Position numbers and translations under genes: made by a program
The notes under the pieces: generated by a model
Database searches by the model: none
What the model saw: only the letters and a program-made list of their open reading frames with translations
What the model was told of the DNA's origin: nothing
In this document: positions 608-52,852 of the stretch, one piece after another
Numbering within the stretch: the stretch's first letter is position 1
Layout: each line of letters begins with the position of its first letter
IMG/VR virus record: IMGVR_UViG_3300028920_000022
Location: 62,001 to 126,000 of that record
Length of the DNA stretch: 64,000 bases
Direction: 5' to 3' (one strand)

Positions 608-1075
608 ATGTACTACAAACCAATCAACCGTAAATCTAGCGCCATTAGTGCATTGCTGGACGAATCCCCGGTATATCAAAAGCAAGGGGAGGTCAATGCT
701 CGTCCTGCGAATACTGGAGAGGCAATCACTACTGAACTAAAGAGTGGTACTACGGAAACTACCAATACTGCAAAGCCCGGAGATTGGATCGTCACTAATC
801 CGAGTGGAGAGCAGTACATTATTTCCGGGGAAAAGTTTTTCAATCGTTACCAACCGACCAGTAAAACTGGAGTTTACGCTGCCAAGGGGTTCTGCCGAGC
901 AGTTCAGAATCCTTTTGGGGAACCGATTCAGATCATGGCATCTTGGGGTGAGGTGCAGGTAGGTGACGAACACTGTTTTATTGCGGACGTTTGCAACGCA
1001 GCCGGGGTAAGAGACGGAGAGCCGTACCTTATTGATGCTGATGCTTTTAGAGATACGTATCAAAAAGCGCATTGA
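608..1075 (+). CDS. PGDYG-like phage protein (start corrected to ATG 608)
   Basis: AKPGDWIVTNPSGEQY motif typical of the PGDYG/phage family. Confidence 0.55.
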   Translation: MYYKPINRKSSAISALLDESPVYQKQGEVNARPANTGEAITTELKSGTTETTNTAKPGDWIVTNPSGEQYIISGEKFFNRYQPTSKTGVYAAKGFCRAVQNPFGEPIQIMASWGEVQVGDEHCFIADVCNAAGVRDGEPYLIDADAFRDTYQKAH

Positions 1076-1100
1076 CAATTAGACTTTAATCGGCTATAAT
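1072..1100 (+). promoter_or_regulatory. perfect sigma70 promoter TTGACA-17-TATAAT; leaderless start at 1107
   Basis: exact consensus; ATG 6 nt after the -10 box; TGA in -35 is the stop of the upstream gene. Confidence 0.9.
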
Positions 1101-1106
1101 TGCTTT

Positions 1107-1541
1107 ATGGAAATCGCAGAAAGTGATAAACCGCTATTCGATGCTTTACCTAAGCTAGTACAGCGAACACAGGAGCTATTGAAGGCAGCCGGGCTTACCT
1201 GTAAGATTAGTGTCAATGATGATGCCTGGTCGGATCCTTCGATTGAACTGGATACTACTGGTATTGGTGTTTGTATTTCGTGGGATTCCGATAAGGTTAC
1301 ATATGGCGCTTTTACTACGGTTTACAATCCGGGAGTGATGTACTACCCAGATGGTAGTGGGGAACCGCCGAGCGAGGATTACAGCGAACTGGGGAAAGCC
1401 AGCACGAATCCTAACGGTCCTCTCACTGAGGCAATCAAGGCATTGATTGAGTTTCGGCTTAATGATCTGTTTGAGCACGAAGCGGACGAAGAGGAAGCCA
1501 AGTATTGGGCGGAAATGGAAAGAGTGGATTTTAATCCTTGA
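1107..1541 (+). CDS. hypothetical acidic protein
   Basis: ORF directly behind consensus promoter. Confidence 0.75.
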   Translation: MEIAESDKPLFDALPKLVQRTQELLKAAGLTCKISVNDDAWSDPSIELDTTGIGVCISWDSDKVTYGAFTTVYNPGVMYYPDGSGEPPSEDYSELGKASTNPNGPLTEAIKALIEFRLNDLFEHEADEEEAKYWAEMERVDFNP

Positions 1542-1574
1542 CAATAGTCCTTATTCCGATCTATAAGGTTGGTC

Positions 1575-1814
1575 ATGACAATTATTCTAGCAAATGGTCC
1601 CAAGGTTCCGGCACACGGCACAACGGCAGCGTGGCGGAGTGTATTGGTTCAAGAGCCTACTGAGCTGGTGGTTTATGCCGAGTATTTCAATGATACTGGA
1701 TCATACTACAGTCACGGGGTGTACTTCGACAGTGCACAATGGAAGGAAGCAAAGCGGCACTTTACGCAAGCGGTATGTCGGGACCTGAGACGAATTGATG
1801 AGATTAGGGGTTGA
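1575..1814 (+). CDS. hypothetical protein
   Basis: ATG 7 nt after TATAAG (promoter 1538-1567). Confidence 0.7.
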   Translation: MTIILANGPKVPAHGTTAAWRSVLVQEPTELVVYAEYFNDTGSYYSHGVYFDSAQWKEAKRHFTQAVCRDLRRIDEIRG

Positions 1815-1898
1815 CAAAAGGTTTAGATAGGGGTAGTATTCTCAACATCAAGTGACGGAAGTCACAGAAAGACACAACAAACAGGAGATTATCGAATT

Positions 1899-2318
1899 AT
1901 GGCACAGGTGAAGATTTTCAATCAGAGTTTCGTGAAGTTGGCTCGTTCGCGAGCTGAGCAGCTGATCGACGGTGGTGAGCGTGGCAGTGTGACTCGTCCG
2001 GCGTTGGCGGATGCGATTGCATCCGAGACGGATCAGGATGTGGCGACGGTTCGCGGGGCAATTGACGCTTGTTTGGCGGGCGGGTTGCTCAAGGGTCTGA
2101 CGACCCGACGTGGACGGAAGGGTGGCATTGTCCGCGAGGTTTCGGAGGCTGATGTTCCCGAGGCACCGGCTGCCAAGGCTGCTCCCGAGGCTGAGGAAAG
2201 CTGTGCGGATGCCATCGAGGCAGCGGCACAGGAGAACGAGGTTGACGAGCGTCCGGCGGAGGGTTGTCCTGCGGAGCAGGCTCCCGAGGCAGCTGCCGAG
2301 ACCGAAGCGACCGAGTAA
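1899..2318 (+). CDS. putative winged-helix DNA-binding protein with Ala/Glu-rich tail
   Basis: RRGRKGGI wing-like motif; promoter 1811-1839; AGGAG SD; GC-rich codons. Confidence 0.6.
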   Translation: MAQVKIFNQSFVKLARSRAEQLIDGGERGSVTRPALADAIASETDQDVATVRGAIDACLAGGLLKGLTTRRGRKGGIVREVSEADVPEAPAAKAAPEAEESCADAIEAAAQENEVDERPAEGCPAEQAPEAAAETEATE

Positions 2319-2324
2319 GGGCTG

Positions 2325-2357: not shown

Positions 2358-2360
2358 TCA

Positions 2361-3844: not shown

Positions 3845-3893
3845 TATACAAAAAGCTTGACCTTGATTCTAAAGAGTGATATAAGGGAACACA

Positions 3894-4415
3894 ATGAAAA
3901 ACGCACAAGAGCGAGCTTTTAGGTTACTGCTATATTATGCCTCAAAGGATAATAATACTGCCGAGGTGACGGTACACCAAGACGGGTCTATTGTTTTCGG
4001 TAACAATACCTGGATTGCTCCAGAGGGTGTGGAGGCAGAACTGAAAACACTACCAGAAGCGCCAATCTCGGATTCGCAGGTAGCAAAGCGGGTAGGGGAG
4101 CTAGTATTGCACGCCGGGTTGTACGACTCTACAGTATACGATTCTGCAGTAATAGCGAAGCGAATCTGTGGCAAAGGAAGTCCTCTTGTCGGGCTAGTGG
4201 ATATAATGCTGTGTAATGCGAAAAGCCGAAAGTGGGCGGAGGGGGTTATGGCGCCTTCGGTCAAGGAGCAACTGGACGAATGTGTTCGGGAGCTTCAGGA
4301 TTTCACGGAGAATGCTGAGTATCCGATACGGAATAATCTTAATCTTCGCAAACTTAACAAATTAGTATCACTAATTCAATCTGGCAAAGTTGGGGTGTTG
4401 CCGGAAAATGATTGA
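3894..4415 (+). CDS. hypothetical protein
   Basis: behind promoter TTGACC-17-TATAAG (3857-3885). Confidence 0.7.
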   Translation: MKNAQERAFRLLLYYASKDNNTAEVTVHQDGSIVFGNNTWIAPEGVEAELKTLPEAPISDSQVAKRVGELVLHAGLYDSTVYDSAVIAKRICGKGSPLVGLVDIMLCNAKSRKWAEGVMAPSVKEQLDECVRELQDFTENAEYPIRNNLNLRKLNKLVSLIQSGKVGVLPEND

Positions 4416-4431: not shown

Positions 4432-4713
4432 ATGACAAAAAATACTGCTCTAGCTCTTATTGTTCAAAAGGTAACTGACCTTCAGGGGTGCAAGGTATCT
4501 GAACTAATTGCCGCATTAGCGGACGATGAAACCAGCAGGGAAGTGGTTATCAATTTTGATATTCCCGAATTAATTGAGTTTCTTGTCCAAAACAAAATGG
4601 TAGTCGAAGTGGCTTATGTTCTGCCCAATATGGGCTATCGTATTAAATCATTTTTGCTACCCACACAATGTAAAGCACATATTTACGGGGATTATGGCGG
4701 ACTAGATGGTTGA
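4432..4713 (+). CDS. hypothetical protein
   Basis: ORF; stop inside TTGACA at 4710. Confidence 0.65.
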   Translation: MTKNTALALIVQKVTDLQGCKVSELIAALADDETSREVVINFDIPELIEFLVQNKMVVEVAYVLPNMGYRIKSFLLPTQCKAHIYGDYGGLDG

Positions 4714-4744
4714 CAATCTAGTGTATTAGAGGTATAAACGGACT

Positions 4745-5521
4745 ATGAGACAAGGACATGACAACGGGCTAATTACCACCAAAGGCAAGAAGGGCAAGAA
4801 ATCTCCGAAGCTTTTGGGAATCAACCTCGGAGCCGACTTTTGTGCTGAGCACGAGTGGGGAATTAAGGACATTAAGAATGCCTTGGGGCTGGATTCTTCC
4901 AAGGTGGGAGTGGAAGCACGAAGGGTTAGGAATATTCCCACAGAAGGGCACGAACGGCTAGAGTGGGTTCAGACCAAGGAATTTTTCGGTTTTTGCCTGA
5001 TGACGAATTGTTATTCTGGTCACATCAACACGGACTATCTATTACGAAGCGTTCGTTTTTACAACAGTTCGTTGTGGACTGCGTGGGATCAAGGTTCATT
5101 CGGAGTTTTTTCCAACGATCCAGCTATCATTGAACAATTGCAGGAGATTTACGATAATCTTCGAAATAAGAATGCGGTAGTTTGGTTGGGTGGCGGCGGA
5201 GTATTTCAGAATGCTGGGTTGTGCATTGGCATTACTGACCGGCTACCTCCGGACGTAGCGAAGCAATGGAAGGAAGCCGATGAGGATCGGAATGCTGCAC
5301 AGAAGTACATGGAGAAGTCAGGAATTGAAAAGATTCTCCGGGATGCTGGGAAAGAATATTTTGCTTTGAGTCCTCGAAAGATGAGTGACGGTTCTTTCAA
5401 GTTCTGGTTGAACCCGGATAATCAAAGGGACTACGATAGCAATTGGTTTACTTTGGAGGAGCTGAAGTTGTGGGCTCAGGACAAGGGTCCGGTTATTCTC
5501 AAGAAAAAGAGGCGATATTAA
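4745..5521 (+). CDS. hypothetical phage protein, leaderless
   Basis: 258-aa ORF; ATG 6 nt after TATAAA of promoter 4710-4738. Confidence 0.8.
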   Translation: MRQGHDNGLITTKGKKGKKSPKLLGINLGADFCAEHEWGIKDIKNALGLDSSKVGVEARRVRNIPTEGHERLEWVQTKEFFGFCLMTNCYSGHINTDYLLRSVRFYNSSLWTAWDQGSFGVFSNDPAIIEQLQEIYDNLRNKNAVVWLGGGGVFQNAGLCIGITDRLPPDVAKQWKEADEDRNAAQKYMEKSGIEKILRDAGKEYFALSPRKMSDGSFKFWLNPDNQRDYDSNWFTLEELKLWAQDKGPVILKKKRRY

Positions 5522-5766: not shown

Positions 5767-6126
5767 ATGGCTGACTGGTACAAGTTTAATCTAGTTTTTA
5801 TCGAACCTCCAGTTGAGGGCAATCTTGCTGCGGCTAACAAAGCTTTGCAGGACGAAGATTATGATGCTCCTGTAATTTCCGCGGAAGGGTGTACGGAAGC
5901 GTTGTGGCGGAGCCCACAGCTAAGCGAAGGGAAGTTGATTAAACTATTTAACAGTTACGGATTGGAGTGTAAATTTCAACTGCACTGGAATTATGAGGAG
6001 GATCGTTTTCCTGGTTGTCATGACTGGGTGTATGTATCTGATTTTGTAGAGGTAAAGGAAAAGATTCTCAAATTGTCAGAAAAAGAGCGAGCGAGTTTGC
6101 GGTGGTGGATTGAAGGAAACTGTTGA
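5767..6126 (+). CDS. hypothetical protein
   Basis: ORF. Confidence 0.65.
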   Translation: MADWYKFNLVFIEPPVEGNLAAANKALQDEDYDAPVISAEGCTEALWRSPQLSEGKLIKLFNSYGLECKFQLHWNYEEDRFPGCHDWVYVSDFVEVKEKILKLSEKERASLRWWIEGNC

Positions 6127-6157
6127 CAGCCGGAATAATTGGCGGTATAAAGGAACC

Positions 6158-6391
6158 ATGAAAAACGAAATTGGTTTTGTAGTCAACGGCAGCGTGTATA
6201 TCACCGAAGTGCAAGTTTTGCAGAGGGATGCTACGGACCTTGTGTTCCTGCAAACTGATTTGCCAAACAACATTGTGGGTGGTGGTCCTAATGTCACGAT
6301 GAAGTTTGAGTTGAGGCAGAATACCGCCTGTGAATGGTTGAAAGAAAACCTGGGAATTGCGCCGGATCGGGTGATTGATAGTGGAAGCTAA
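6158..6391 (+). CDS. hypothetical protein (start corrected, leaderless)
   Basis: ATG 6 nt after TATAAG of promoter 6123-6151. Confidence 0.7.
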   Translation: MKNEIGFVVNGSVYITEVQVLQRDATDLVFLQTDLPNNIVGGGPNVTMKFELRQNTACEWLKENLGIAPDRVIDSGS

Positions 6392-7206: not shown

Positions 7207-7429
7207 AGCCTGGATAGACGAATCCAATTTTTCTGGTAATTTTGTGATTGTCGATGATGAGGCGGACATGGGTGATCTAATTGATCATTTAGTACGCACA
7301 TCTTACAATGGAGCCATGGGAAGCACCGGGCTAACCGTTGCACATACTAAAAGAATTATTGCAAGGCTGAACCGGGCGGAAATTAATTGGAATTGTTATC
7401 CTGAGCATTTAAGACCATTGAAAGCTTGA
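7184..7429 (+). pseudogene. C-terminal fragment of a HAD-family (HAD_SAK_2-like) protein
   Basis: RGEEIKAW..FVIVDD..DM...LVRT...GLT pattern present, N-terminal DxD motif absent. Confidence 0.5.
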
Positions 7430-7464
7430 CAAGGTTTCGCAATTGATGGTATAAGAGTTGAGTA

Positions 7465-7677
7465 ATGGTTAAGGAAAGAAAAGCTCAGTGGCGGCAGGAC
7501 ACGCCGCAACAACAGATGGTAGCTTTAACGCAAGCAATTGCTGGTTATGCTGTGTGGTTTGTTGAGGAGCCGGAAGCCTTAAAACCCGAGAACGTACAGA
7601 GAGTATTTCAAAACATAAACGAAAAGTGTGAGGATCTTTTCGAACTTTCCAATTGGATGGATTCACAATGGCAATGA
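7465..7677 (+). CDS. hypothetical protein
   Basis: behind promoter 7426-7455. Confidence 0.65.
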   Translation: MVKERKAQWRQDTPQQQMVALTQAIAGYAVWFVEEPEALKPENVQRVFQNINEKCEDLFELSNWMDSQWQ

Positions 7678-8887: not shown

Positions 8888-9181
8888 ATGAGTAGCACAC
8901 CGCCTCCACCCTGTGCCTGGTGTAAAAACTGGGGTAAAGGAAGTCCTAATTGTGATCACATCAACGAATGTCATGATGATAATGATTGGGAAAGGCTTAA
9001 TCCGGTAGCGAACTGGCAATGGGTTCGGTTGGTATGGTTCGTGAACGAGGTTGACAGTTCTGGCATGCATCCGAACGACAAATCGCACAATATTGCTGAC
9101 AAGCTCAGGACGATGATTGCTAATGGTTACAAACCTATTGTGGATAATTCACCAACGCTTGACAAGCTAGAAAGAGATTGA
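8888..9181 (+). CDS. hypothetical protein
   Basis: ORF with CxxC. Confidence 0.55.
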   Translation: MSSTPPPPCAWCKNWGKGSPNCDHINECHDDNDWERLNPVANWQWVRLVWFVNEVDSSGMHPNDKSHNIADKLRTMIANGYKPIVDNSPTLDKLERD

Positions 9182-9193
9182 TATAACATCCGG

Positions 9194-9436
9194 GTGAAGT
9201 ACACTTTAGAAGAAAAGCTAACGGGCAAGCGGAGCAAGCTGGTAGGGTCCACTTGTGAGGGATATGGACGAGAGCTATGTTCATGCGGGCGTGGGTATAT
9301 TGAATACCGGCGAGATCGCAATGGTGTAAAGATTTCTTTACACAGTGTGTATTTAGACAGCAAGAGTTTTGGTAGAATTGAAACGGCACCCTGTTGTGAG
9401 GAATGTGCGAGTGAGCAGTGGGAGTCGAAATGGTAA
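9194..9436 (+). CDS. Cys-rich hypothetical protein, leaderless GTG start
   Basis: GTG 6 nt after TATAAC of promoter 9159-9187. Confidence 0.65.
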   Translation: MKYTLEEKLTGKRSKLVGSTCEGYGRELCSCGRGYIEYRRDRNGVKISLHSVYLDSKSFGRIETAPCCEECASEQWESKW

Positions 9437-10807: not shown

Positions 10808-11116
10808 GAGCGGAGTAGCAGTTCAGATTGAGGAGCGCGGGAAGGTTGTTTGGGAGCATTATTTCCGAGACAATGGTACTGCGGCGGGGATAGCTCAGGC
10901 ATATCGTTTAGCTAACACGCTGGCTACACAACTTCGGCAGGATGAGAGAAAGATTAATTAATGCTTACTCCTGAACAAAAACAATTGGCAGCTCAGTGGT
11001 TGGTGGAAAAACTACGTGAAAGAAGCGATACGGCTGCGCAAAAGAAATTGTTGACGAACGACCGGAGCCAAAATAAGAACTTGACTTAGTTTCTTATTGA
11101 GTATATAGTTGCTGTC

Positions 11117-11440
11117 ATGGAAAACAAGGAACCAGCAGAATACAAGCGTTTGACCGACAAGCATCCCACCATGCAAAAGCTGCAAAAGTTGTGGGAACTG
11201 GCAGACGAACTGGGTATTCACATCGATTTTTACGGTCACAGAACCGTTGTGACTGACGATCAGTATCCTGATCGGATTTACGACATGATCGATCTTGATT
11301 CACCCGATGCTGCTATTTCAGAATTTCCTTATGCTTTTGAGGTTGCCCTGCGGTTTGAGAACAGGTTTAGCCCAACTGCATTTTGTCAAGGATTCAGATA
11401 TTGCTGCTGTAAGTACATATGTGGAGTCGTATCATATTGA
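11117..11440 (+). CDS. hypothetical protein, leaderless
   Basis: ATG 7 nt after TATAGT of promoter 11081-11109. Confidence 0.7.
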   Translation: MENKEPAEYKRLTDKHPTMQKLQKLWELADELGIHIDFYGHRTVVTDDQYPDRIYDMIDLDSPDAAISEFPYAFEVALRFENRFSPTAFCQGFRYCCCKYICGVVSY

Positions 11441-12665: not shown

Positions 12666-12702
12666 TTGACGACACTTTAGTGTTTCTGTTATAAAGGTTC
12701 CC

Positions 12703-13011
12703 ATGAAGAACAAGAAAGAAAAAGTGGTACGAGCGGACTATCACGACAATGGTGACAAAGACAATTCGCTTGCCGGTTGGGCGGAAGTCATTCGTCAGCA
12801 AAGCGAGGAAATGCGCAAACAAGAACAGCAGCGCAAAGCAAAGCTGAACGAAAAACTTGCTGTCATTGAGGGTAAGGGGTTGGAGTTCGGAGATCGTGTT
12901 TTGGCTATTTTTGATCTTTATCGCGAGCGCTACATGATGTCTGGAGAGTTTTGTGAAAAGGTATTTAAGTGGGCTGCAGAGCAGCGTGGTATTGGAGAAG
13001 AGGATTATTGA
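12703..13011 (+). CDS. hypothetical protein, leaderless
   Basis: promoter 12666-12695. Confidence 0.7.
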   Translation: MKNKKEKVVRADYHDNGDKDNSLAGWAEVIRQQSEEMRKQEQQRKAKLNEKLAVIEGKGLEFGDRVLAIFDLYRERYMMSGEFCEKVFKWAAEQRGIGEEDY

Positions 13012-13768: not shown

Positions 13769-14050
13769 ATGATTCCCGAATTGCATAATTGGTTTACAAA
13801 ACGCAGCGTATGGAAAGCGCCGGAGGATAACCCAATCCGAGTGGCAGGAGAAGTTTGGAATCATCCTGGTTTTCCCAACGGGCATAAGATTCAAACTTCC
13901 TCGCCAACCAGTTTCGATCCGCAGTCAAGGCTTTTGACTACAATTAGCGGATCGGTATATAGGTTGGAAAAACCAGATCCCGAATGGATCAAGTGGATGA
14001 GAGAACAAGGAATAGAATTCGATCCTGAAAATCCGATCAGGTTTACTTGA
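13769..14050 (+). CDS. hypothetical phage protein
   Basis: G.V..HP.F.NG..I.TS...T.SGSVY.L pattern. Confidence 0.7.
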   Translation: MIPELHNWFTKRSVWKAPEDNPIRVAGEVWNHPGFPNGHKIQTSSPTSFDPQSRLLTTISGSVYRLEKPDPEWIKWMREQGIEFDPENPIRFT

Positions 14051-14081
14051 CAGCCGCCTGCTTTTATGAGATAAAGGGTGT

Positions 14082-14669
14082 ATGAGTTGTTACATTAATG
14101 CACCAGCAACCAAACTACTAGCCACTCATTGCGCCTGTTGTGGGCGCCTATTGGTGGATTCTAAAAGTGTAGAGTGTGGAGTGGGACCGGAGTGTCGAAA
14201 AAAGCATGGTTATGGTGAAGCCCAGCATCTTCCCAATTGGGAAAAATTGCTAACGGTTCTGCTAATGCCATCGCCACCAGAGAGTCTAACCGAAGCTATT
14301 GCGATTCAAGACGCTCATCGCGCTGCTAATGTTTTGGTTTACCACATTGCTGCCCAACAATCGGGAGAATATGTTGAGCAATACGTGGAGGCGTTGGCGG
14401 CATTGGGTTATGTTAAACTAGCTCGACGAATGGTACAAAGACTAAATGGAATAATTGTTGATCAAGATGGGGCAACATTAGTGGTGCGTGGTCCCTATAA
14501 TCCTCAATTGGGAATTCGTTGGATTCCGGGGGCAGCATATAGCCGAAAAAGAGGTATTCGGTTTACTGCTCCAGCAGAATATAATAAATTGGTCTGGGAG
14601 GCGCTAAAGAATGCTTATAGAACAGGAACGTTGGTTGCTGGTTCTAAAGGGGTGAGAAAACTGGCTTGA
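14082..14669 (+). CDS. DUF6011-like zinc-finger protein, leaderless
   Basis: CACCGR.L.D..S...G.GPEC; promoter 14047-14075. Confidence 0.7.
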   Translation: MSCYINAPATKLLATHCACCGRLLVDSKSVECGVGPECRKKHGYGEAQHLPNWEKLLTVLLMPSPPESLTEAIAIQDAHRAANVLVYHIAAQQSGEYVEQYVEALAALGYVKLARRMVQRLNGIIVDQDGATLVVRGPYNPQLGIRWIPGAAYSRKRGIRFTAPAEYNKLVWEALKNAYRTGTLVAGSKGVRKLA

Positions 14670-14701
14670 CATTACAACGCGCATTATGGTATAAAGGGTT
14701 T

Positions 14702-14959
14702 ATGATTAAGCTGGAAAAAGAAATTCTCAAGGAAGCTCAGCATTGGGTTCCGAGAGCCAAGGTGCAGCAGATCCGATCTGCGCTTTTGAAGCTGACTCAT
14801 GGAGGGAAGCGGGCGAGGATTTTGGCGGTAGCCGAGGCTGCCGATTGTTCGCAGGCAATGATTGAGTTTTGCTATCAGGCGAATCTTCTCAAAGGATATA
14901 CACACCAATACGGTCGGCATGGCGGATTCACTAGAAAGCTGCATTTGGTTCTGGTATAG
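14702..14959 (+). CDS. putative winged-helix protein (start corrected, leaderless)
   Basis: YGRHGGF wing-like motif; promoter 14666-14695. Confidence 0.55.
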   Translation: MIKLEKEILKEAQHWVPRAKVQQIRSALLKLTHGGKRARILAVAEAADCSQAMIEFCYQANLLKGYTHQYGRHGGFTRKLHLVLV

Positions 14960-16693: not shown

Positions 16694-16731
16694 ATGTTGA
16701 CTATCCAGTTTATTCGGTGTATAAGAAGAAC

Positions 16732-17271
16732 ATGGAATTGAAATTATCGGTTACAGCACCATCACCAAAGGTGGCAAAATCTGGAACTAGGGTAAAAACG
16801 AAGAAATCCAACTTCGATTTGTTCAAGTTTATGACCACCAAACGCCCTTGGCTGTATGTCAAACGGTTGGATGTTTTGGGTACTGGCTCTAGTCGTATCG
16901 TTTATATCGTTAATAACAAGTTGGTTATTAAGATGGCGTATGCTGGTTACGAATGTAGGGGAAACATTCTACCTATTGGTGCTGGCAAAACGCAAAATAA
17001 AGTCGAAGCCATGGTTTCTGCGGACCCTATGAGCAATGGTTTGGTTGCCAAGGTGTACGCGGCGGCGCCCGACTACCGCTGGATAATTGTAGAAAATTGT
17101 GATGAAGGCAGTGATCAGGATGATGATGATTTCGATTGGAAAGCCTTTGAAAAACTGAGCCAAAAGTATGATTTAAGGGACGATGATGATGTTCTTGGTA
17201 TAAACTCTGATAAGAAGCTAGTAATGCTTGACTATGGGCTCGATGGTGATGTATATAATGACTACTACTAG
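16732..17271 (+). CDS. minimal protein-kinase-fold protein, leaderless
   Basis: LGTGSSRIVY, VIK, helix-C E, LDYG (DFG-like); promoter 16697-16725. Confidence 0.65.
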   Translation: MELKLSVTAPSPKVAKSGTRVKTKKSNFDLFKFMTTKRPWLYVKRLDVLGTGSSRIVYIVNNKLVIKMAYAGYECRGNILPIGAGKTQNKVEAMVSADPMSNGLVAKVYAAAPDYRWIIVENCDEGSDQDDDDFDWKAFEKLSQKYDLRDDDDVLGINSDKKLVMLDYGLDGDVYNDYY

Positions 17272-20163: not shown

Positions 20164-20526
20164 ATGAGGAATAAGATTGAAAAACTATTGGATGTTAGCA
20201 ATGCTTTGGCTGTTAACAAAAAGATCGTTCAAAAACAATTTGAACCCTTGTCTGAGTTTGTCGGTAAAGAAAAGCTAGAATCAATTCAAAAAAACTTGAT
20301 CGAGAAAAGTAAAAAAACTCTAATCGAAAATTATCAAAAATATATGCCAGAAGCTTCGTTAGATGCCTTACTGGCGTTCTACGATACTCCCGAGGGAAAA
20401 CAGGCAGCAGAAGCTTACGAGATAATTGCGTTAGAAAACTTTAATAGCAGTTTTCAACATGGAAAAGAAATGGCTGAAGAAATGTTGGCGGAAATCATGC
20501 CTCCGGATATTAGCCAGACCAATTGA
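20164..20526 (+). CDS. DUF2059-like protein
   Basis: Y.KY....L..L.AFY.TPEGK. Confidence 0.55.
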   Translation: MRNKIEKLLDVSNALAVNKKIVQKQFEPLSEFVGKEKLESIQKNLIEKSKKTLIENYQKYMPEASLDALLAFYDTPEGKQAAEAYEIIALENFNSSFQHGKEMAEEMLAEIMPPDISQTN

Positions 20527-21020
20527 CAGATGGTTGCTGGCTGTGTTATATAGCTGGCAATGGTTGATTTCGACGAAGCCCAAGCTACTAAAATTATTAC
20601 AGATTTTTCGCGCCGGTATTGTTCTTCGGACCCGGCAACCCAGGAAACCCTACAAAAGAACTGTTCTAACAGGCTTTAATTAAAACTATTGCATTTCCTT
20701 TCATTCAACCGCTAGGTGTGTTATTGTTTGCTTGGTTGTTAACGGTGGTTATTTAAAATGGATATTGACAGCGGACTAATTGCTCTACATACTGGCGAGG
20801 AACAATACCTGAAGTCCAGAGGGTGGACGCCCGCCCTTTATCACACTAAAGGTGGGGATATTATTAGGGTATGGTCTCTGGATGGTCTTGCGTTTACTCA
20901 CCAAGCGGCTATGCGTAAGCAGAAGCGGCTTGACCTGGGAAAGTGGCAGGAAATGGATCGGGTGGCAGCTGAGCTGCTACCTACTAAATATGGGATTACT
21001 AAAGATCCTTTGGTGGAATA

Positions 21021-32664: not shown

Positions 32665-33312
32665 ATGTCAAAACAAACACAACTTACTATTAACGATCTG
32701 GTAGTTATTCAAAAGTTCCTTTGTAAGACTCTAGCTGAGCCTGGTAGTCGTGTCACTTCGTCTGATGTATATGAAAGCACCAAGAATGATGTGGAATCAA
32801 ACTTGGAGCTGCACCACTTTCGTGCGTCATTGTCAGAGCGTATCAAGGATGGTACGTTGGCTGGCGTGGCTACTAGAAAAGGTCGTTATGGTGGGATTGT
32901 GGTAGACGATATTGATCTGGCGAAAGAAACTATTGCTAGGTTGGAACAGTCTGTTGAAACTGGTAAGCCAGTACAAAAAATCAAGGCAGAAGTTCCTACC
33001 GGCAAGGAACACACTGGAGAATTTGCAATCACTGTTTCCAGTAATTATCGTATTGCCCCAATTGATAGACTTAATTGGTCCTTGCAAAAGCGCCACAACA
33101 ATGTTAATGGTGAAGCTGGTTGGACTAACATGTACTATTACGGAACACTTGAGCAGGCAGTTCACGGAACAGCAAAGGCAATTTTGGACAAGAGATTGCG
33201 CACTTCCGGGGAAATTGTGATAACATTAAAAGATCTGGAAACTATGCTTAATAATATTCATAAGACGATTGTAAATGAAATGAATATTGAGGTACAGAAG
33301 TTTACTGAGTAA
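32665..33312 (+). CDS. winged-helix-like N-domain protein
   Basis: RKGRYGGI motif; promoter 32596-32624, GGAG SD. Confidence 0.65.
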   Translation: MSKQTQLTINDLVVIQKFLCKTLAEPGSRVTSSDVYESTKNDVESNLELHHFRASLSERIKDGTLAGVATRKGRYGGIVVDDIDLAKETIARLEQSVETGKPVQKIKAEVPTGKEHTGEFAITVSSNYRIAPIDRLNWSLQKRHNNVNGEAGWTNMYYYGTLEQAVHGTAKAILDKRLRTSGEIVITLKDLETMLNNIHKTIVNEMNIEVQKFTE

Positions 33313-36818: not shown

Positions 36819-37074
36819 AGCTTACTCAATCACAAAAAGATCAAATTATTGATGCTATCTCTAAGCATTGCCAAGGCACGCCATTGCAGCCAAACGCCGA
36901 GTTTGCTTCACACTATCTTGGTAACTACGTGATTTCACTATTAGAAAACCGTGACGAACTTTTAAGCTAAGCGATACAAAAACTCATTGACAATCTTAGT
37001 TTGTTGAGGTAAAGTCACTCTTACAAGGTTGACAGAAACCTAAACAAACCAACAAACAACAAACGAGGTAGATT

Positions 37075-37449
37075 ATGGCACGAAATGTTCTTTCCTACAA
37101 GTTCCAGTCAGCAGCGCGCGACGTCCTGCGTAAGGGTTGTGCTGAGGGGCAGCGGATCACCCGCGAGCAGCTCAGCGAGGCTCTGGCAGAGCGCGGCTAC
37201 GCTGTTTCCCCTGTCCTTGCGGCTGCAATCATTGCCGAGTCGGATGAGCTGAATACTCCCACCCAGGAGTGGATGCTCTGTCGCGGTCGGTACGGTGGCA
37301 TCCGTGAGGCTGACCTGGAGGCTTACCAGGCTGAGTTGGCTGCAGAGGCAGCCCGAAAGGCTAAGGCGGCGGAGCGTGCGGCTAAGCGGGCAGCCAAGGC
37401 TGCTGCGGAAGCCGGGCAGACCGACGAGCCCGAAGCGGTTGCGGTCTAA
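37075..37449 (+). CDS. putative winged-helix protein with Ala/Lys-rich tail
   Basis: RGRYGGI motif; promoter 36987-37015; AAAC-rich leader plus GAGG SD; GC-rich codons. Confidence 0.65.
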   Translation: MARNVLSYKFQSAARDVLRKGCAEGQRITREQLSEALAERGYAVSPVLAAAIIAESDELNTPTQEWMLCRGRYGGIREADLEAYQAELAAEAARKAKAAERAAKRAAKAAAEAGQTDEPEAVAV

Positions 37450-38409: not shown

Positions 38410-38466
38410 GGTTTTCGCCTTAGGAACCGCTTGACAAGTGCCCGTTCTGATTGGTATTATCAGGGC

Positions 38467-39354
38467 ATGGTAGACAGAATTCAGTGGTATTGCGGTCCGC
38501 GGCTCGATGGCGTGCTCGCTGATCTGCAGGACCTTGAAGACCAGGGAAACCGTGTTGCCGAGCGCAAAAAGGACGGTCGCTGGTGTGGTCTATATGTAGA
38601 TTACTTTAAATCTTGTAAACATAAATTCGAATCTCGTGCTGGAATTGATCATGAAGATTCGCTACTATTGGGTTTAAATAATCTAGATCTTGGTGATTTG
38701 GGTAAAGATACTATTCTAGTTGGGGAACTAGAAGCGGGAACCACAGCAGCTAATATACGGTTTTCTCGATTGGGATACCGACGTATATGGTTATTCGATG
38801 TGGTTTGTTTGAGGGGACATGATTTGCGCCACATGGTTCTACGGGACCGTCGTATTCTATTGAGGGAAACCATTTGGAACATGTTTCCCGCCAAGACGCA
38901 GCAACGATTGCCTTTGGTGGAAGACAGTGAGGATAATTTTGTAGATTTCTACAAGCGTACTTTGGAAGATGGTGACGAGGGTGTGGTCATAAAGAGGTTA
39001 GATATTTCTGGCTGGTCCTATCGTTCGTCTGGGAAAACTGATCATTGGGTCCGGGTTAAGCCCACACGAACGATTGACTATGCCGTTATTGGTCCAGACA
39101 AAACCGACGGAGGAGATTTGACAGCCAATCTTGGGTTGTGGGAAAACGGTAAGTTGCGCAAGGTTCTCAAGTACCAGCTACCTCAAATGACACTTTTGCC
39201 TAACGGACATTTGGCAGAAGAGGGAAGGGTGGTTGAGATGTACGGGCGTGAATTGTTTGAATCAGGATCTCTGCGTTCTGCGCAATTCCTGCGCTGGCGA
39301 GATGATAAAACGCCTGATATGTGTGATGGAACAATTAATATGGTGAGTTTATGA
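38467..39354 (+). CDS. compact ATP-dependent DNA ligase (start corrected, leaderless)
   Basis: motifs I ERKKDG, III GEL, IIIa FDVV, IV EGVVIK, V VKP, VI FLRWRDDK. Confidence 0.82.
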   Translation: MVDRIQWYCGPRLDGVLADLQDLEDQGNRVAERKKDGRWCGLYVDYFKSCKHKFESRAGIDHEDSLLLGLNNLDLGDLGKDTILVGELEAGTTAANIRFSRLGYRRIWLFDVVCLRGHDLRHMVLRDRRILLRETIWNMFPAKTQQRLPLVEDSEDNFVDFYKRTLEDGDEGVVIKRLDISGWSYRSSGKTDHWVRVKPTRTIDYAVIGPDKTDGGDLTANLGLWENGKLRKVLKYQLPQMTLLPNGHLAEEGRVVEMYGRELFESGSLRSAQFLRWRDDKTPDMCDGTINMVSL

Positions 39355-39653: not shown

Positions 39654-39920
39654 AAGAATATAGTTGTAGTGATATTGAAAGTCTTTTAGGAATAAAAAAC
39701 GCCAGAGATGTTTTTCAAAGGGTTTCACGTTTAATTAGAAACCCTGCCTGCGTTGATAGTGAAAATGTATTAGTTGATGCGTATATCAATACATATATTT
39801 TATCCGGAAAAGCGGCGGCAAGAAAAGAAATTGCTAGGAGAATTCAATTAGCAAAAGAAATAAGAAGGTTAAGAGAATTGTATCTTGACAGGATTCGTCG
39901 TTCCAGCTATCCTCCTTCCT

Positions 39921-40361
39921 ATGACTAACAAGGTAAAGATTCTTCGAGGTATCGCTGGCTCAGGTAAGTCCACGTACACACACGCGCATTACTACAATGC
40001 TGTAGTCGTGAGTGCCGATCATTTTTTTGAAGATGCACAGGGTAATTATAAATTCGATGTTTCGAAACTTGGGGATGCACATAGCTCTTGTTTCCGTAAA
40101 TATATTGAAGCATTACAGGCTGGTGAGCCTTTGATAGTAGTGGACAACACGAACACTACGGCTTGGGAATGTAGTCCGTATGTTCAAGGAGGAGCGGCTT
40201 TTGGTTATGATGTAGAAATCATTACTTTGGACTGTGATCCGGAGGTTGCCGCTAATCGTAATGTACATGGGGTTCCTAGAAAGAGTGTTTTAGAAATGTA
40301 TCGGAGATTAACGAAGAACCGTTTGCCTCCGTTTTGGAACCAAAAAACAGTGAAACCATGA
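39921..40361 (+). CDS. P-loop kinase (AAA_33/polynucleotide kinase-like), leaderless
   Basis: RGIAGSGKST, SAD, IVVDNTN, RNVHGVP. Confidence 0.85.
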   Translation: MTNKVKILRGIAGSGKSTYTHAHYYNAVVVSADHFFEDAQGNYKFDVSKLGDAHSSCFRKYIEALQAGEPLIVVDNTNTTAWECSPYVQGGAAFGYDVEIITLDCDPEVAANRNVHGVPRKSVLEMYRRLTKNRLPPFWNQKTVKP

Positions 40362-49644: not shown

Positions 49645-50213
49645 AGGAACCAGACGAACGTTTGTTAGATTGTGCATTAATTATGCTGACATGTAGAAGC
49701 CCACATCCGCCATCTGTAAAATGGGCATCAGAATTTGTTATTGATTTGTTGACCCGCGAATGTAATGAAGAAGTTCAAAAAAAGATTAATGAAAAGTCAT
49801 GGCGGTTGGATGAGTGGAAAAACAACAGTAAAGATTTTAGATATGTTGCGGAAAAAATTAGTAACAAAATAAGCAGGGGTTTGCAAAAAACGGTTATACT
49901 TCAGCATACAAGTATGGCAAACGAATGTTCATACTTAGAATGGTTTTTCTACAACGTAGACAAGAAAACCAGAATGGAACTGCAAGCCAAATATCAGGAA
50001 ATTACTGGTGAAAATGTACCTCCGTGTTTTGATGTTTTGGACGACGAACTGGACACGATTCCTCAAAAAGATCCACCATCTACAGAAGATTATTTGAATG
50101 ATGATGGCTACAAATCAATAGTAGAAAACGATCAGAGTTCAATTAAAGAGTAAAAATAGTTGACATCATGGCTGCATGACGGTAGACTGCGTCCGCTAAG
50201 AAAGTGGTGAACA

Positions 50214-50687
50214 ATGGCAAGTCCTAGTGGTTTTTCTGATATGTTACGGCAGCTTGGCGATTGGTTGGGTATTACGCTGGTTGTGGCTAGTGTTGCTGTC
50301 GGAATTGTAACAATTGCCTACTTTATTTATGCCTACAATGCTGGTGTAGAAGATGCCAGAGCGCGAATTTTGGAGCAAAAAAATGCTTCCGATGCTCAAC
50401 TAGAAATAGAAAAACTCAAGAAGCCGCCATTAACTATTGCGTGTTATGATGGGAACAACCGTTTGGTTTTTGGACTACAGGGTCTTGGCAATGTAGATTT
50501 TCACCCCATGAATGCGACTGGTAATATGTGTATTGGAAATGAATGTTCCCATTGTTCGGTAATAAATGGAAGTAAAAAATGGGATGAAATTCAAAAACCG
50601 GTGGCTGTTAACAAACCGGACAAAAAAGAGCAAGAAAAAACGAAGGACACTACGGTTAGTGTCTTTTTGCCTAAAACATCCAAGTGA
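50214..50687 (+). CDS. membrane-anchored protein
   Basis: promoter 50160-50188; one TM. Confidence 0.65.
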   Translation: MASPSGFSDMLRQLGDWLGITLVVASVAVGIVTIAYFIYAYNAGVEDARARILEQKNASDAQLEIEKLKKPPLTIACYDGNNRLVFGLQGLGNVDFHPMNATGNMCIGNECSHCSVINGSKKWDEIQKPVAVNKPDKKEQEKTKDTTVSVFLPKTSK

Positions 50688-51416
50688 GATACATATTCCA
50701 ACAAATATTTCTTGGTAGTGGATCATATTCCCTACAACAAATACGTACAGTCTTTTTCCGACTAGACGATGCATTTTCTCATTTGTCCGGCATGCAACAA
50801 AACGGTGGAATGGGTACAGAGTTTAGTGAGGAATACCAACAAAAAAACGAAGAAGAGATAAAAGACATTCTTCGTGATGTTATTTGTGCTTTTGGGTTCG
50901 ATCCTGGCTGCGTCGAATTTAAAAAACAAAAGTTGCCACCCAACTCAGGACCCATAGCCAACAAGTTATTGGAAGATGCGCCAGACGAAAACCAATATGC
51001 ACACATTAGTTTTAGACCTTATTCTGCAAACGAAAAGCCGCCAGATCCAAAAGTAAAAGATAATGGTCTTGTAGGTATAATCAAGTTTGACATGGATTGT
51101 GATAGATTATATCAACTAGCTAGGCTTCTTTGCGAGAAATTCTGATGCGGTATTGGTGTTTGTTGTTGCTGTGTGTTTCGTGTCGTAGCGTTGTTGACGA
51201 CCCAAACAAACCACAAGAAGATTGTCGTGAAAAATGGGAAGAACGTGGCAGCAGCGTTGTTTGCATGCACCCTTATCATCAAATATTTTTGATATACAGA
51301 AATGGGCAGCCGGATGGAGCTATATGCAAATGTATTCCTCCAACCGACGCTGGTGACGCTGGTATAGAGTCAAAACTCTATGTAAATATTACTGACAAAG
51401 ATTTGGAAAACAAATA

Positions 51417-51887
51417 GTGTATCTTATACTTGCTGGCTGTTTAATTTTAGTTGGGTTAATTATTTCCTCATTTTTTGGAAAAGCAAGGGATATACAAAAA
51501 ATAGACGCGCAAAATAATAGAGAAGATCCCAAACTAGAAGTGAAAGATATTCCTCCTGGTTGTACGGGTTTAACCTATTCGTTGCACAAAAATCATTCTA
51601 ATCTTCCTTTTGTATATGATTTTTCAAACGCGGAATGTGTCGGTGGCGAGCCTGTTATAATAAATGTTACAGAGGACAAGAAAATTAACCTTATTATTTC
51701 CAAGGCTACATATAAAACATTACTTAGTTCAGCGCCTGAAAACAGTTCGTCCGTTTTGTACGTTAATAACATAACTGTTTTGCCGAGGTTGAAACACTTG
51801 GTGGCAACAATCTCAGCAATCAAAAGACTAAAACATACAAAAGAGATAGTCAGACGAGAACGAATCATCAAGGATGTGGTGGTATAA
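51417..51887 (+). CDS. membrane-anchored protein with C-terminal IKDVVV motif
   Basis: N-terminal TM; ends ERIIKDVVV*. Confidence 0.6.
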   Translation: MYLILAGCLILVGLIISSFFGKARDIQKIDAQNNREDPKLEVKDIPPGCTGLTYSLHKNHSNLPFVYDFSNAECVGGEPVIINVTEDKKINLIISKATYKTLLSSAPENSSSVLYVNNITVLPRLKHLVATISAIKRLKHTKEIVRRERIIKDVVV

Positions 51888-52207
51888 GTGCTACGAGAAA
51901 TTGAGATTGTTTTAAGCGGACCTATTTGTAATTGTAAATCGCAGGACTTGGGGTGGGGTTTTGCAGGAGATTCACTGCGAGTATTTTGTAAACGATGTAA
52001 CACCAATCTATATGTAGAGAAATCTAAAATCCAGGGTTGTGTCGTATGTGATAGCGAATATCCTGACGGTTTAGCGGAGTATACTGAAATAATAGATAAA
52101 TCAGAACCGGCTAATGTATCTGTTTTGTATAGTACAGGCGAAGATGGAAAGCCCGTTAGGCACATTAAATAGTTGACATGCTAGCGCGGTTTTGATATCA
52201 TGCGGGA

Positions 52208-52852
52208 ATGAAATATCCTCGAACATATCATCTGCCGTTCTCTCCCGGGGCAACAAACGATGATAAAACTATGCGGGATATTAGTTCTTTATTGAATGTG
52301 CCCGTAGTTATAACAGAAAAAATGGACGGATCAAACACCTGCTTGATGCGTCAAGAATGTTTTGCCAGAAGCCATGCCGCTTCGCCGGCACACATTTCTT
52401 TTAGCATGTTTAAAGCCTTACATGCTAACATAAAACGTTGTATCCCTACCGGCGTTCAGTTTTTTGGTGAATGGCTGTACGCCAAGCATTCAATAATATA
52501 TGAGAACTTACCGAGCTATTTTATGCTATTTGGGGTTAGAGATCTAGATCATAGTAAATGGTTATCGTGGGAAGCGGTAGAACAATTGTCTGATGTTATT
52601 GGGGTTAATCTAGTTCCTACAATAGCTAGAAACAAAACTTTCAAGACGGAAAAAGAATTAAAGAAATTCATCAACAAGTATCAAAAATTGCCTGGCGAAT
52701 TTGGACAAAGAGAAGGTTTTGTCATTCGGCATATGACTGAGTTCGATAATAGTACATTTCAACAATGTGTTGCAAAGTGGGTACGCGCCGGGCATAATCA
52801 GATTGATGAGCACTGGATGCGCAAAGAAGTGGAGAAAAACGGTTTAAGATGA
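52208..52852 (+). CDS. RNA ligase-family nucleotidyltransferase, leaderless
   Basis: KYPRT.HLP.S, TEKMDGSN, GEW, EGFVIR, AKWVR; promoter 52173-52201. Confidence 0.85.
   Translation: MKYPRTYHLPFSPGATNDDKTMRDISSLLNVPVVITEKMDGSNTCLMRQECFARSHAASPAHISFSMFKALHANIKRCIPTGVQFFGEWLYAKHSIIYENLPSYFMLFGVRDLDHSKWLSWEAVEQLSDVIGVNLVPTIARNKTFKTEKELKKFINKYQKLPGEFGQREGFVIRHMTEFDNSTFQQCVAKWVRAGHNQIDEHWMRKEVEKNGLR

What the first reader, a model, noticed from the sequence alone, without database searches (positions are those of the whole stretch)
1072..52208. Systematic leaderless mRNAs from host-type sigma70 promoters
Seen: the start codon lies 6 nt (1107, 4745, 6158, 9194, 14082, 14702, 16732, 38467, 52208) or 7 nt (1575, 11117, 12703, 29441, 39921) after the -10 hexamer, leaving no room for an SD. 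Other promoters (before 1899, 32665, 37075, 58654) give leadered, SD-containing mRNAs. Established: leaderless mRNAs initiate on 70S ribosomes and are abundant in some phyla. Inference: a two-tier early programme that may resist translation-inhibiting defences. This also corrects several ORF-track starts that begin at the TTG of the -35 box.
Basis: partly seen in the sequence, partly recalled or inferred. Interest (0 to 1): 0.62.

Follow-up and report, generated by a model that had tools for sequence, protein, structure and literature searches.

The report
Leaderless early genes of a huge phage
In a 459-kb phage genome from marine sediment, about 29 early genes sit directly against consensus bacterial promoters, so their mRNAs should begin at the AUG with no ribosome-binding site, and related phages keep the same layout.

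Summary
All 14 listed sites read TTGACN, 17-18 nt, a TATAAT-like hexamer, 6 or 7 nt, then ATG (one GTG). The pattern occurs 14 times in the window against 0.55 expected from shuffles.

Across the genome, the distance from the -10 hexamer to the first ATG of long ORFs peaks sharply at 6-7 nt. The early block (genome 52-126 kb, + strand) holds 29 such units.

The base before the ATG is a pyrimidine in 25 of 30 sites, which fits transcription starting on the A. In 15 of 29 units the upstream gene's TGA stop lies inside the -35 box.

Homologue N-termini confirm the ATG as the true start for four genes. Related metagenomic phages keep the promoter and the exact 6- or 7-nt spacing at orthologous genes while the intervening bases differ.

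No RNA data exist, so the transcription starts remain inferred. The host is unknown.

The phage also encodes IF3, S21 and peptide deformylase. That suggests, speculatively, a translational early-to-late switch. This is a new variant of a known kind.

The parts
569..610 (+). Promoter TTGACT-17-TATAAG, then 10 nt to ATG 608 (gene 608-1075). Near-leaderless, predicted leader about 3 nt.
1072..1109 (+). Perfect consensus promoter TTGACA-17-TATAAT, then 6 nt to ATG 1107 (gene 1107-1541). The TGA stop of the upstream ORF lies inside the -35 box (1073-1075).
1538..1577 (+). TTGACA-18-TATAAG, then 7 nt to ATG 1575 (gene 1575-1814). The upstream stop lies in the -35 box (1539-1541).
3857..3896 (+). TTGACC-17-TATAAG, then 8 nt to ATG 3894 (gene 3894-4415).
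4710..4747 (+). TTGACA-17-TATAAA, then 6 nt to ATG 4745 (gene 4745-5521, 258 aa). The N-terminus (MRQG...) aligns with the SD-led starts (MR.G...) of homologues in other phages.
6123..6160 (+). TTGACA-17-TATAAA, then 6 nt to ATG 6158 (gene 6158-6391). The upstream stop lies in the -35 box.
7426..7467 (+). TTGACA-18-TATAAG, then 9 nt to ATG 7465 (gene 7465-7677). Near-leaderless.
9159..9196 (+). TTGACA-17-TATAAC, then 6 nt to GTG 9194 (gene 9194-9436). This is the only non-ATG case and the weakest, because G rather than a pyrimidine precedes the start.
11081..11119 (+). TTGACT-17-TATAGT, then 7 nt to ATG 11117 (gene 11117-11440).
12666..12705 (+). TTGACG-18-TATAAA, then 7 nt to ATG 12703 (gene 12703-13011).
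14047..14084 (+). TTGACA-17-GATAAA, then 6 nt to ATG 14082 (gene 14082-14669; DUF6011 at residues 8-43). The upstream stop lies in the -35 box.
14666..14704 (+). TTGACA-18-TATAAA, then 6 nt to ATG 14702 (gene 14702-14959). The stop of gene 14082-14669 lies in this -35 box.
16697..16734 (+). TTGACT-17-TATAAG, then 6 nt to ATG 16732 (gene 16732-17271). This is the only leaderless unit with a strong intrinsic terminator (16663-16689) directly upstream.
20523..20562 (+). TTGACA-18-TATATA, then 7 nt to ATG 20560, which opens only a 39-aa ORF. Possible small leaderless protein.
29405..29443 (+). TTGACA-17-TATAAA, then 7 nt to ATG 29441 (gene 29441-29626). The orthologue in relative L108 keeps a promoter abutting the ATG (18-nt spacer, 6 nt).
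38431..38469 (+). TTGACA-18-TATTAT, then 6 nt to ATG 38467 (DNA-ligase-like gene 38467-39354). The promoter and the 6-nt spacing are conserved in three relatives at 58-78% protein identity.
39885..39923 (+). TTGACA-17-TATCCT, then 7 nt to ATG 39921 (AAA_33 kinase-like gene 39921-40361; the Pfam match starts at residue 7). The 7-nt spacing is kept in two relatives whose discriminator sequences are unrelated.
52173..52210 (+). TTGACA-17-TATCAT, then 6 nt to ATG 52208 (RNA-ligase-family gene 52208-52852). Thirteen homologues begin with the same M..KYPRT.H motif. The database gene call for this contig is cut by 21 residues.
1811..1901 (+). Leadered promoter TTGACA-17-TAGTAT, leader about 53 nt with GGAG, ATG 1899.
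32596..32667 (+). Leadered promoter TTGACA-17-TATCAT, leader about 40 nt, ATG 32665.
36987..37077 (+). Leadered promoter TTGACA-17-TAAAGT, leader about 52 nt with GAGG, ATG 37075. The start of the leader is conserved in relatives.
50160..50216 (+). Leadered promoter TTGACA-17-TAGACT, 25 nt to ATG 50214.
58600..58656 (+). Leadered promoter TTGACA-16-TAGGAT, 26 nt with AGGAG, ATG 58654 (rIIB-like gene). The leadered form is conserved in relatives.

Best explanation
The window is the early region of a 459-kb phage genome assembled from a marine-sediment metagenome. The phage has no detectable RNA polymerase of its own, so early genes must be read by the host core enzyme. About 29 early genes (17-18 of them in the window) each carry a very strong sigma70-type promoter:
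- an A-rich stretch upstream;
- TTGACA at -35;
- a 17-18-nt spacer;
- TATAA(A/G/T) at -10;
- often a G-rich discriminator.

The promoter is placed so that the usual start position, the 7th or 8th base after the -10 hexamer, is the A of the ATG. The transcripts therefore begin with AUG, or with 1-3 extra bases in a few cases. They cannot carry a Shine-Dalgarno sequence, so they should be translated by the leaderless route, in which 70S ribosomes with initiator tRNA bind a 5'-terminal AUG.

In half of the units the previous gene's TGA stop is part of the -35 hexamer. The promoter then exactly fills a 31-nt gap between genes.

Shown here: the sequence pattern, its statistics, the correct protein N-termini for four genes, and conservation of the spacing in related phages.

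Inferred: the transcription start sites, use of the host primary sigma factor, early timing, and the leaderless mode of translation.
For: (1) All sites were verified.

(2) Enrichment is strong:
- 14 matches against 0.55 expected in shuffles;
- 16 against 0 for the reversed control genome-wide;
- distance histogram peaks of 16 at 6 nt and 13 at 7 nt over a background of about 1;
- 29 of 56 strict promoter-like sites in genome 52-126 kb are of this type, with offsets 6:16, 7:9, 8:2, 9:1, 10:1.

(3) The base at -1 is a pyrimidine in 25 of 30 sites (C in 18) and +1 is A. From my own knowledge, this matches the known start-site preference of bacterial RNA polymerase.

(4) For most sites an in-frame stop lies 6-36 nt upstream, so no earlier start codon exists. 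29 of 30 starts are ATG.

(5) N-termini are confirmed by homology:
- 52208;
- 4745;
- 38467;
- 39921.

(6) Orthologous genes in four phage lineages keep -35, -10 and the exact 6-nt (ligase-like) or 7-nt (AAA_33) spacing, while spacer and discriminator bases change. Relatives carry further units of their own.

(7) TTGACA is enriched only in the intergenic DNA of the early + strand block.

(8) No multisubunit or T7-like RNA polymerase was found.

(9) The first 36 nt after the ATG fold less stably than random windows, p = 7e-4.
Against: - No RNA evidence exists. The only public run holding the sequence is a DNA metagenome.
- The last base of the -10 hexamer is T in only 9 of 29 leaderless units, and A or G in 18. 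That is unusual for a primary sigma factor.
- The phage encodes three sigma-like ORFs.
- About 30% of the leaderless starts have an AAGG(G/A) stretch in the -10/discriminator region that could act as a weak Shine-Dalgarno sequence on longer transcripts.
- Only 1 of 28 promoters has a clear terminator upstream, so read-through transcripts probably also cover these genes.
- Three of six orthologue pairs do not share the leaderless form.
- The 5'-end structure difference against SD-led genes is only marginal, p = 0.065.
- The host is unknown.
Confidence: 0.78

Rival explanations
1. The promoters are real, but translation of these genes depends mainly on longer read-through transcripts. Ribosomes would either re-initiate after the stop codon 31 nt upstream or use the weak AAGG(G/A) Shine-Dalgarno-like stretch inside the -10/discriminator. 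On this view the tight promoter-to-ATG spacing is a by-product of squeezing a promoter into a minimal gap between genes.
For: - Only 1 of 28 leaderless promoters has a clear terminator upstream.
- Gaps of 31-36 nt between stop and ATG are common, and 15 of 29 upstream stops lie inside the -35 box.
- 30% of the starts have anti-SD pairing of -5 kcal/mol or better.
Against: - 70% of the starts have no SD-like stretch; the median pairing energy equals that of random positions.
- The spacing is fixed at 6-7 nt rather than merely short, and it stays fixed in relatives while the discriminator sequence changes.
- The pyrimidine(-1)/A(+1) bias is a transcription signal, not a translation signal.
- Some units follow a terminator or a long gap, for example 16697, 11081, 12666 and 52173.
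Confidence: 0.1
2. The motif is read by a phage-encoded sigma factor rather than the host primary sigma. The genes would still be leaderless, but not 'host-type' and not necessarily immediate-early.
For: - Three sigma-like ORFs lie at genome 139.4, 218.9 and 351.5 kb.
- The last -10 position is not T in 20 of 29 leaderless units.
Against: - TTGACA, a 17-nt spacer and TATAAT is the consensus of bacterial primary sigma factors. Unit 1072 is a perfect 12-of-12 match.
- The units cluster at the very start of the long + strand block, upstream of all sigma-like ORFs.
- No polymerase is encoded that could start the programme otherwise.
Confidence: 0.08
3. Transcription starts elsewhere, or the annotated ATGs are not the translation starts, so the mRNAs are conventionally leadered.
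For: No transcription start has been mapped. Site 9194 uses GTG preceded by G.
Against: - Four N-termini are confirmed by homologues.
- In-frame stops lie within the promoters.
- The offset peak is sharp and the spacing is conserved in relatives.
Confidence: 0.04

Closest known systems
Thermus phage phiYS40 leaderless middle/late transcripts
   Same: A large phage in which a whole temporal class of mRNAs lacks a leader, with the balance of initiation factors implicated. Infection raises IF2 and lowers IF3, as summarised in PMC3594737.
   Different: - There the leaderless class is middle/late. Here it sits at the head of the early block.
- Here the promoters carry a full -35 TTGACA.
- This phage itself encodes an IF3, the factor reported to inhibit leaderless translation (PMC9031893). 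The predicted logic is therefore the reverse.
- The host is unknown and the genome has low GC (39.5%).
Lambda cI mRNA from promoter PRM, and other single leaderless phage or transposon genes
   Same: A sigma70 promoter whose +1 is the A of the AUG. Translation is by 70S ribosomes (PMC10491246, PMC9031893).
   Different: Those are single regulatory genes. Here there are about 29 genes in one block, mostly small proteins of unknown function plus RNA-ligase-, DNA-ligase- and kinase-like enzymes.
-10 motif adjacent to ORFs in Deinococcus-Thermus (and, from my own knowledge, actinobacterial leaderless genes)
   Same: The -10 element lies immediately upstream of the ORF as a common mode of expression. 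About 30% of ORFs show it in that phylum (PMC12340547).
   Different: - That is a cellular, phylum-wide trait. Here it is a viral early programme with strong -35 boxes.
- The rest of this genome uses Shine-Dalgarno sites: 58% of other genes pair at -5 kcal/mol or better, against 15% of random positions.
Early promoter arrays of T4, T5 and SPO1-type phages (my own knowledge)
   Same: Dense arrays of near-consensus host promoters in front of many small early genes. The gene content is T4-like (rIIA/rIIB, RNA ligase). Phage sigma factors probably serve the later classes.
   Different: Those early mRNAs carry leaders with Shine-Dalgarno sequences. A 335-kb phage in IMG/VR (L012/G001) with the same promoter consensus also has mostly 18-23-nt leaders.
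Translation genes of huge phages (IF1, IF3, S21, peptide deformylase)
   Same: This genome encodes IF3, S21 and peptide deformylase, as described for huge phages (PMC7162821, PMC9723584).
   Different: The papers found by my searches do not link these genes to leaderless phage mRNAs. A search for 'leaderless' together with 'huge phages' found nothing relevant.

Membership tests
Leaderless mRNA genes | The transcription start coincides with the start codon, or lies within a few nt of it. | not testable with these tools
   No RNA run holds the sequence. The start is predicted only from geometry: the -10 hexamer ends 6-7 nt before the ATG in 25 of 29 units, with pyrimidine at -1 and A at +1 in 25 of 30.
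Leaderless mRNA genes | No Shine-Dalgarno sequence can lie on the transcript upstream of the start codon. | tested here: met
   With 6-7 nt between -10 and ATG there is no transcribed leader. SD-like AAGG stretches in 30% of units lie upstream of the predicted +1.
Leaderless mRNA genes | The codon at the 5' end is the true translation start, preferably AUG. | tested here: met
   29 of 30 starts are ATG. In-frame stops lie 6-36 nt upstream in most units. Homologue N-termini confirm 52208, 4745, 38467 and 39921.
Leaderless mRNA genes | The 5' end is unstructured. | tested here: inconclusive
   Mean folding energy of the first 36 nt is -2.6 kcal/mol, against -4.2 for random windows (p = 7e-4) and -3.8 for SD-led starts (p = 0.065).
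Primary-sigma (sigma70/sigma-A) promoters | -35 TTGACA and -10 TATAAT hexamers separated by 17 +/- 1 nt. | tested here: met
   TTGAC(N) in every unit, spacer of 17 or 18 nt in all but one (16 nt), and T-A-T-A-A in most -10 hexamers. Unit 1072 matches 12 of 12.
Primary-sigma (sigma70/sigma-A) promoters | A conserved T at the last position of the -10 hexamer. | tested here: not met
   T occurs in only 9 of 29 leaderless units (A 10, G 8, C 2), against 15 of 27 other promoter-like sites. This may be compensated by the strong -35 box, the A-tract and the G-rich discriminator (inference).
Primary-sigma (sigma70/sigma-A) promoters | Recognised by the host holoenzyme. | not testable with these tools
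   The host is unknown. IF3 relatives are scattered over many phyla at 36-48% identity. The only hint is a related contig binned as a Desulfosporosinus MAG.
phiYS40-type leaderless programme | The leaderless class is the middle/late class, and infection lowers IF3 (PMC3594737). | tested here: not met
   The units lie at the head of the + strand block among rII, anti-restriction and ligase genes, and the phage encodes its own IF3. Timing itself is inferred, not measured.

The most novel reading that the evidence does not exclude
The phage uses the mode of translation initiation as a clock. Immediate-early proteins would be made from leaderless mRNAs on host 70S ribosomes. Later, the phage's own IF3, perhaps together with its S21, shifts initiation towards Shine-Dalgarno-led mRNAs and shuts off the leaderless early class. 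This would be the mirror image of phiYS40. The phage IF3 gene is SD-led and appears to start at ATT or TTG, like autoregulated bacterial infC.
Probability: 0.15. Interest if true: 0.8.

Novelty: new variant of a known kind. Interest (0 to 1): 0.58.

Why it matters
- It would be the first described case, as far as my paper searches show, of a huge phage whose early programme is largely leaderless. It is shared by a clade of uncultivated sediment and soil phages.
- It is a practical warning for annotation. Gene callers that expect a Shine-Dalgarno sequence mis-place these starts. One database call loses 21 conserved residues, and calls in relatives begin inside the -35 box.
- It gives a compact natural design in which stop codon, promoter and start codon fit within 38 nt.
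- It provides a concrete, testable link between phage-encoded IF3/S21 and the structure of phage mRNAs.

Tried and rejected
- RNA evidence: the look-up of sequencing runs found one DNA metagenome run and no RNA. Read laying was therefore not used, because contigs of a DNA run cannot show transcript ends.
- Close relatives in reference collections: the GenBank phage collection gave none by DNA, and rIIA reached at most about 26% identity by protein. In IMG/VR, scans with the ligase-like and rIIA proteins found nothing. The 4745 protein found only 26-38% relatives in phages of 30-63% GC that lack the leaderless layout. Relatives were found only through the protein word search and contig look-ups.
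- Host inference from the phage IF3 failed. The best bacterial hits are spread over Spirochaetales, Cytophagia, Bdellovibrio, Verrucomicrobia, Clostridia and others.
- Rfam found only tRNAs in the window.
- An initiator tRNA, which could favour leaderless translation, was sought and not found. The single tRNA-Met call is an odd 86-nt molecule without initiator features.
- Ribosomal protein S1 and phage RNA polymerases were not found. The T7-type search had no positive control, so its blank is weak.
- The idea that leaderless and leadered promoters form two cleanly different -10 classes was rejected. TATAA(A/G/C) hexamers also occur on leadered units.
- My crude gene calls and Shine-Dalgarno energies pick the best of several candidate starts. 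They are used only for rough proportions.

Full report
**What the window is.** The window is bases 62,001-126,000 of a single 458,729-bp contig (GC 39.5%). IMG/VR holds it as a virus record that CheckV rates complete. The only public run that holds it is a marine-sediment DNA metagenome.

The window encodes rIIA- and rIIB-like proteins, two RNA ligases, a Ku-like protein, DNA-ligase-like proteins, an anti-restriction protein and four tRNAs. Genes run on the - strand from 0 to about 50 kb and again from about 410 kb to the end. They run on the + strand from about 52 to 410 kb. The window is therefore the first part of the long + strand block. No close relative exists in the GenBank phage collection.

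**Check of the observation.** Each has TTGAC(A/T/G), a 17- or 18-nt spacer, a TATAAT-like hexamer, and then 6 nt (nine sites) or 7 nt (five sites) to an ATG. Site 9194 uses GTG. Each start opens an ORF of 61-295 aa. The four leadered promoters are also there, with leaders of about 26-53 nt containing GGAG-type sites.

Eleven more lie just upstream of the window, at genome 52.4-61.3 kb.

**Is it more than chance?** Three independent counts say yes.
- A loose pattern occurs 14 times in the window against 0.55 +/- 0.83 in shuffles.
- A stricter pattern gives 14 forward and 2 reverse matches in the genome, against none for the reversed control.
- For first ATGs of ORFs of at least 50 aa on the + strand, a promoter-like site ends 6 nt upstream in 16 cases and 7 nt upstream in 13. 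Every other offset from 0 to 40 has about one, apart from a small bump near 26 nt, the leadered class.

In genome 52-126 kb, 29 of 56 strict promoter-like sites are of the leaderless type. TTGACA is enriched in intergenic DNA only in this block.

**Further anatomy.**
- Aligned on the ATG, the units show an A-rich stretch upstream of the -35 box and G at the position before the -10 hexamer. The hexamer is usually TATAA followed by A, G or T, and the discriminator is often G-rich.
- The base before the ATG is a pyrimidine in 25 of 30 sites, and C in 18. From my own knowledge, bacterial RNA polymerase prefers to start 7-8 nt after the -10 hexamer on a purine preceded by a pyrimidine. That is exactly the A of these ATGs.
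- In 15 of 29 units the upstream ORF ends with the TGA inside the TTGACA box, giving a 31-nt stop-to-start gap.
- In most units an in-frame stop lies 6-36 nt upstream of the ATG, so there is no alternative upstream start. In a handful the only alternative is the TTG of the -35 box, which cannot be on a transcript made from that promoter.
- Other genes in the genome use Shine-Dalgarno sites. 58% pair with the anti-SD at -5 kcal/mol or better, against 15% of random positions. This is a rough figure, because I took the best of several candidate starts.
- The leaderless starts have the same median pairing energy as random positions. However, 30% carry an AAGG(G/A) stretch spanning the -10 hexamer and discriminator.
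- Only one leaderless promoter (16697) has a clear intrinsic terminator just upstream. Most of these genes probably also lie within longer transcripts.
- The first 36 nt of the predicted mRNAs fold less stably than random windows (p = 7e-4) and marginally less than SD-led starts (p = 0.065).

**Are the ATGs the real protein starts?** Four starts were checked, and all are supported.
- For the RNA-ligase-family gene at 52208, thirteen homologues of 214-220 aa all begin with the same conserved N-terminal motif as the ATG at 52208. The database gene call for this very contig starts 21 residues later and loses that motif.
- The 4745 protein aligns from residue 1 with homologues in unrelated phages, whose starts are SD-led.
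- The AAA_33 match at 39921 starts at residue 7.
- The 38467 protein and its orthologues share their first residues.

**Related phages.** Protein searches found syntenic metagenomic contigs at 58-79% protein identity: one ENA contig of 163 kb, several JGI contigs and Logan contigs.
- They use the same promoter consensus and carry their own leaderless units, with offsets of 5-7 nt and ORFs of 60-295 aa.
- At the ligase-like gene, three relatives keep TTGACA, a 17-18-nt spacer, a TA...T hexamer and exactly 6 nt to the ATG. In the 58%-identical one, the spacer, hexamer and discriminator all differ in sequence.
- At the AAA_33 gene, two relatives keep exactly 7 nt with unrelated discriminator sequences.
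- The 29441 orthologue also keeps a promoter abutting its ATG.
- The orthologues of 52208, 7465 and one gene upstream of the window are not leaderless, and a 44%-identical ligase homologue is not either. So units are gained and lost.
- Conserved length with free sequence is what a constraint on the position of the transcription start predicts.
- A 335-kb IMG/VR phage with the same promoter consensus has mostly 18-23-nt leaders and only three leaderless-type matches.

**Context in the genome.**
- No multisubunit or T7-like RNA polymerase was detected (the T7-type search had no positive control).
- Three sigma-like ORFs lie at 139, 219 and 351 kb. This fits a programme that starts on host holoenzyme and later switches sigma factors.
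- The phage also encodes a full-length IF3. It has a strong AAGGAG site and an apparent ATT or TTG start. A peptide deformylase and a thioredoxin lie next to it. A ribosomal protein S21 homologue is also encoded.
- Neither S1 nor an initiator tRNA was found.

**Most likely mechanism.** Host RNA polymerase with its primary sigma factor fires from these strong promoters directly after infection. It makes mRNAs that begin with AUG, and 70S ribosomes translate them without a Shine-Dalgarno interaction. I put this at about 0.78.

Three rivals remain:
- Translation comes mainly from read-through transcripts, by re-initiation or by the weak SD-like stretch (about 0.10).
- A phage sigma factor, rather than the host one, recognises the promoters (about 0.08). 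The frequent non-T at the last -10 position is the main argument for this.
- The transcription or translation starts are mis-placed (about 0.04).

**A speculative extension.** IF3 at high level inhibits leaderless translation (PMC9031893). The phage's own IF3 could therefore shut off the early class later in infection. That is the reverse of phiYS40, where leaderless middle/late mRNAs go with lowered IF3 (PMC3594737).

**Comparison with what is known.** Leaderless genes with a promoter abutting the ORF are known in several settings:
- lambda cI (PMC10491246);
- the middle/late classes of phiYS40 (PMC3594737);
- cellular genes of Deinococcus-Thermus, at about 30% of ORFs (PMC12340547).

Huge phages are known to encode IF3, S21 and peptide deformylase (PMC7162821, PMC9723584). 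Transcript maps of the jumbo phages AR9 and phiKZ show no leaderless mRNAs. My paper searches found no description of a leaderless early programme in a huge phage. I therefore rate this a new variant of a known kind.

**Limits.**
- There are no RNA data.
- The host is unknown. One related contig sits in a MAG labelled Desulfosporosinus, which is only a hint.
- My gene calls are crude.
- The full 163-kb relative could not be pattern-searched.

Noticed in passing
G000:C1 about 192.7-194.7 kb (locus L017, ORFs 1228-1779, 1943-2458, 2789-3112): The phage encodes a full-length IF3 with a strong AAGGAG site and an apparent non-AUG start (ATT or TTG, as in autoregulated bacterial infC). It is followed by a peptide deformylase with a SEC-C-like tail and a thioredoxin.
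   Followed up: partly
G000:C1 about 180.5 kb (locus L018, ORF 1432-1785): A ribosomal protein S21 homologue of 117 aa with a long basic C-terminal tail. No S1 homologue was found in the genome.
   Followed up: partly
G000:C1 complement 451588-451662: A well-formed tRNA with anticodon UUA, a suppressor reading the TAA stop codon, among 16 tRNAs in the genome. Whether any genes use TAA as a sense codon was not examined, and no other genetic code was applied.
   Followed up: no
window 16125-16351 and 16375-16689 (+): Two consensus promoters are followed by no convincing ORF and each by a strong terminator hairpin. The predicted transcripts of about 190 and 280 nt fold with z-scores of -3.9 and -3.0 and have no Rfam match. 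They are candidate phage small RNAs.
   Followed up: partly
window 1073-1075, 1539-1541, 4711-4713, 6124-6126, 7427-7429, 14048-14050, 14667-14669, 20524-20526: The TGA stop codon of the upstream gene is part of the next promoter's -35 hexamer (TTGACA). This holds for 15 of 29 leaderless units in the early block.
   Followed up: yes
window 52208-52852; L027 18118-19041; L110 10918-11385: Automatic gene calls mis-place leaderless starts. The database protein for 52208 lacks 21 conserved N-terminal residues. In relatives the callers begin at the TTG of the -35 box.
   Followed up: yes
window 39921-40361, 52208-52852, 54393-55721: The window holds a kinase-like AAA_33 protein, an RNA-ligase-family protein, and a second RNA ligase whose orthologue in relatives carries a tRNA-binding domain. 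This looks like an RNA or tRNA repair set, and two of the three genes are leaderless.
   Followed up: no
window 1-8000 compared with the rest: GC content is 46-51% in the first 8 kb, where leaderless units are densest, and falls to about 36-41% beyond 20 kb. The genome mean is 39.5%.
   Followed up: no
window 58077-58115 (-): One leaderless-type match lies on the minus strand, antisense inside the rIIA-like gene, and opens a 70-aa ORF. It may be a chance match or an antisense unit.
   Followed up: no
window 36987-37077; L026 7576; L110 8113: The leadered promoter before 37075 has a long C/A-rich leader. Its first dozen bases are nearly identical in the L026 relative and similar in L110, which suggests a functional leader element.
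   Followed up: no
G000:C1 126-250 kb, intergenic regions of the + strand: A recurrent AATAATTAC-like word appears in 5-7 of 41 intergenic regions. It may be part of a later-class promoter.
   Followed up: no
P0122; L110 17724-18905 (-): The 78%-identical relative's contig is deposited in a MAG labelled Desulfosporosinus sp. (Bacillota), a weak hint to the host. The same contig carries an IS605 OrfB/TnpB-type gene.
   Followed up: partly
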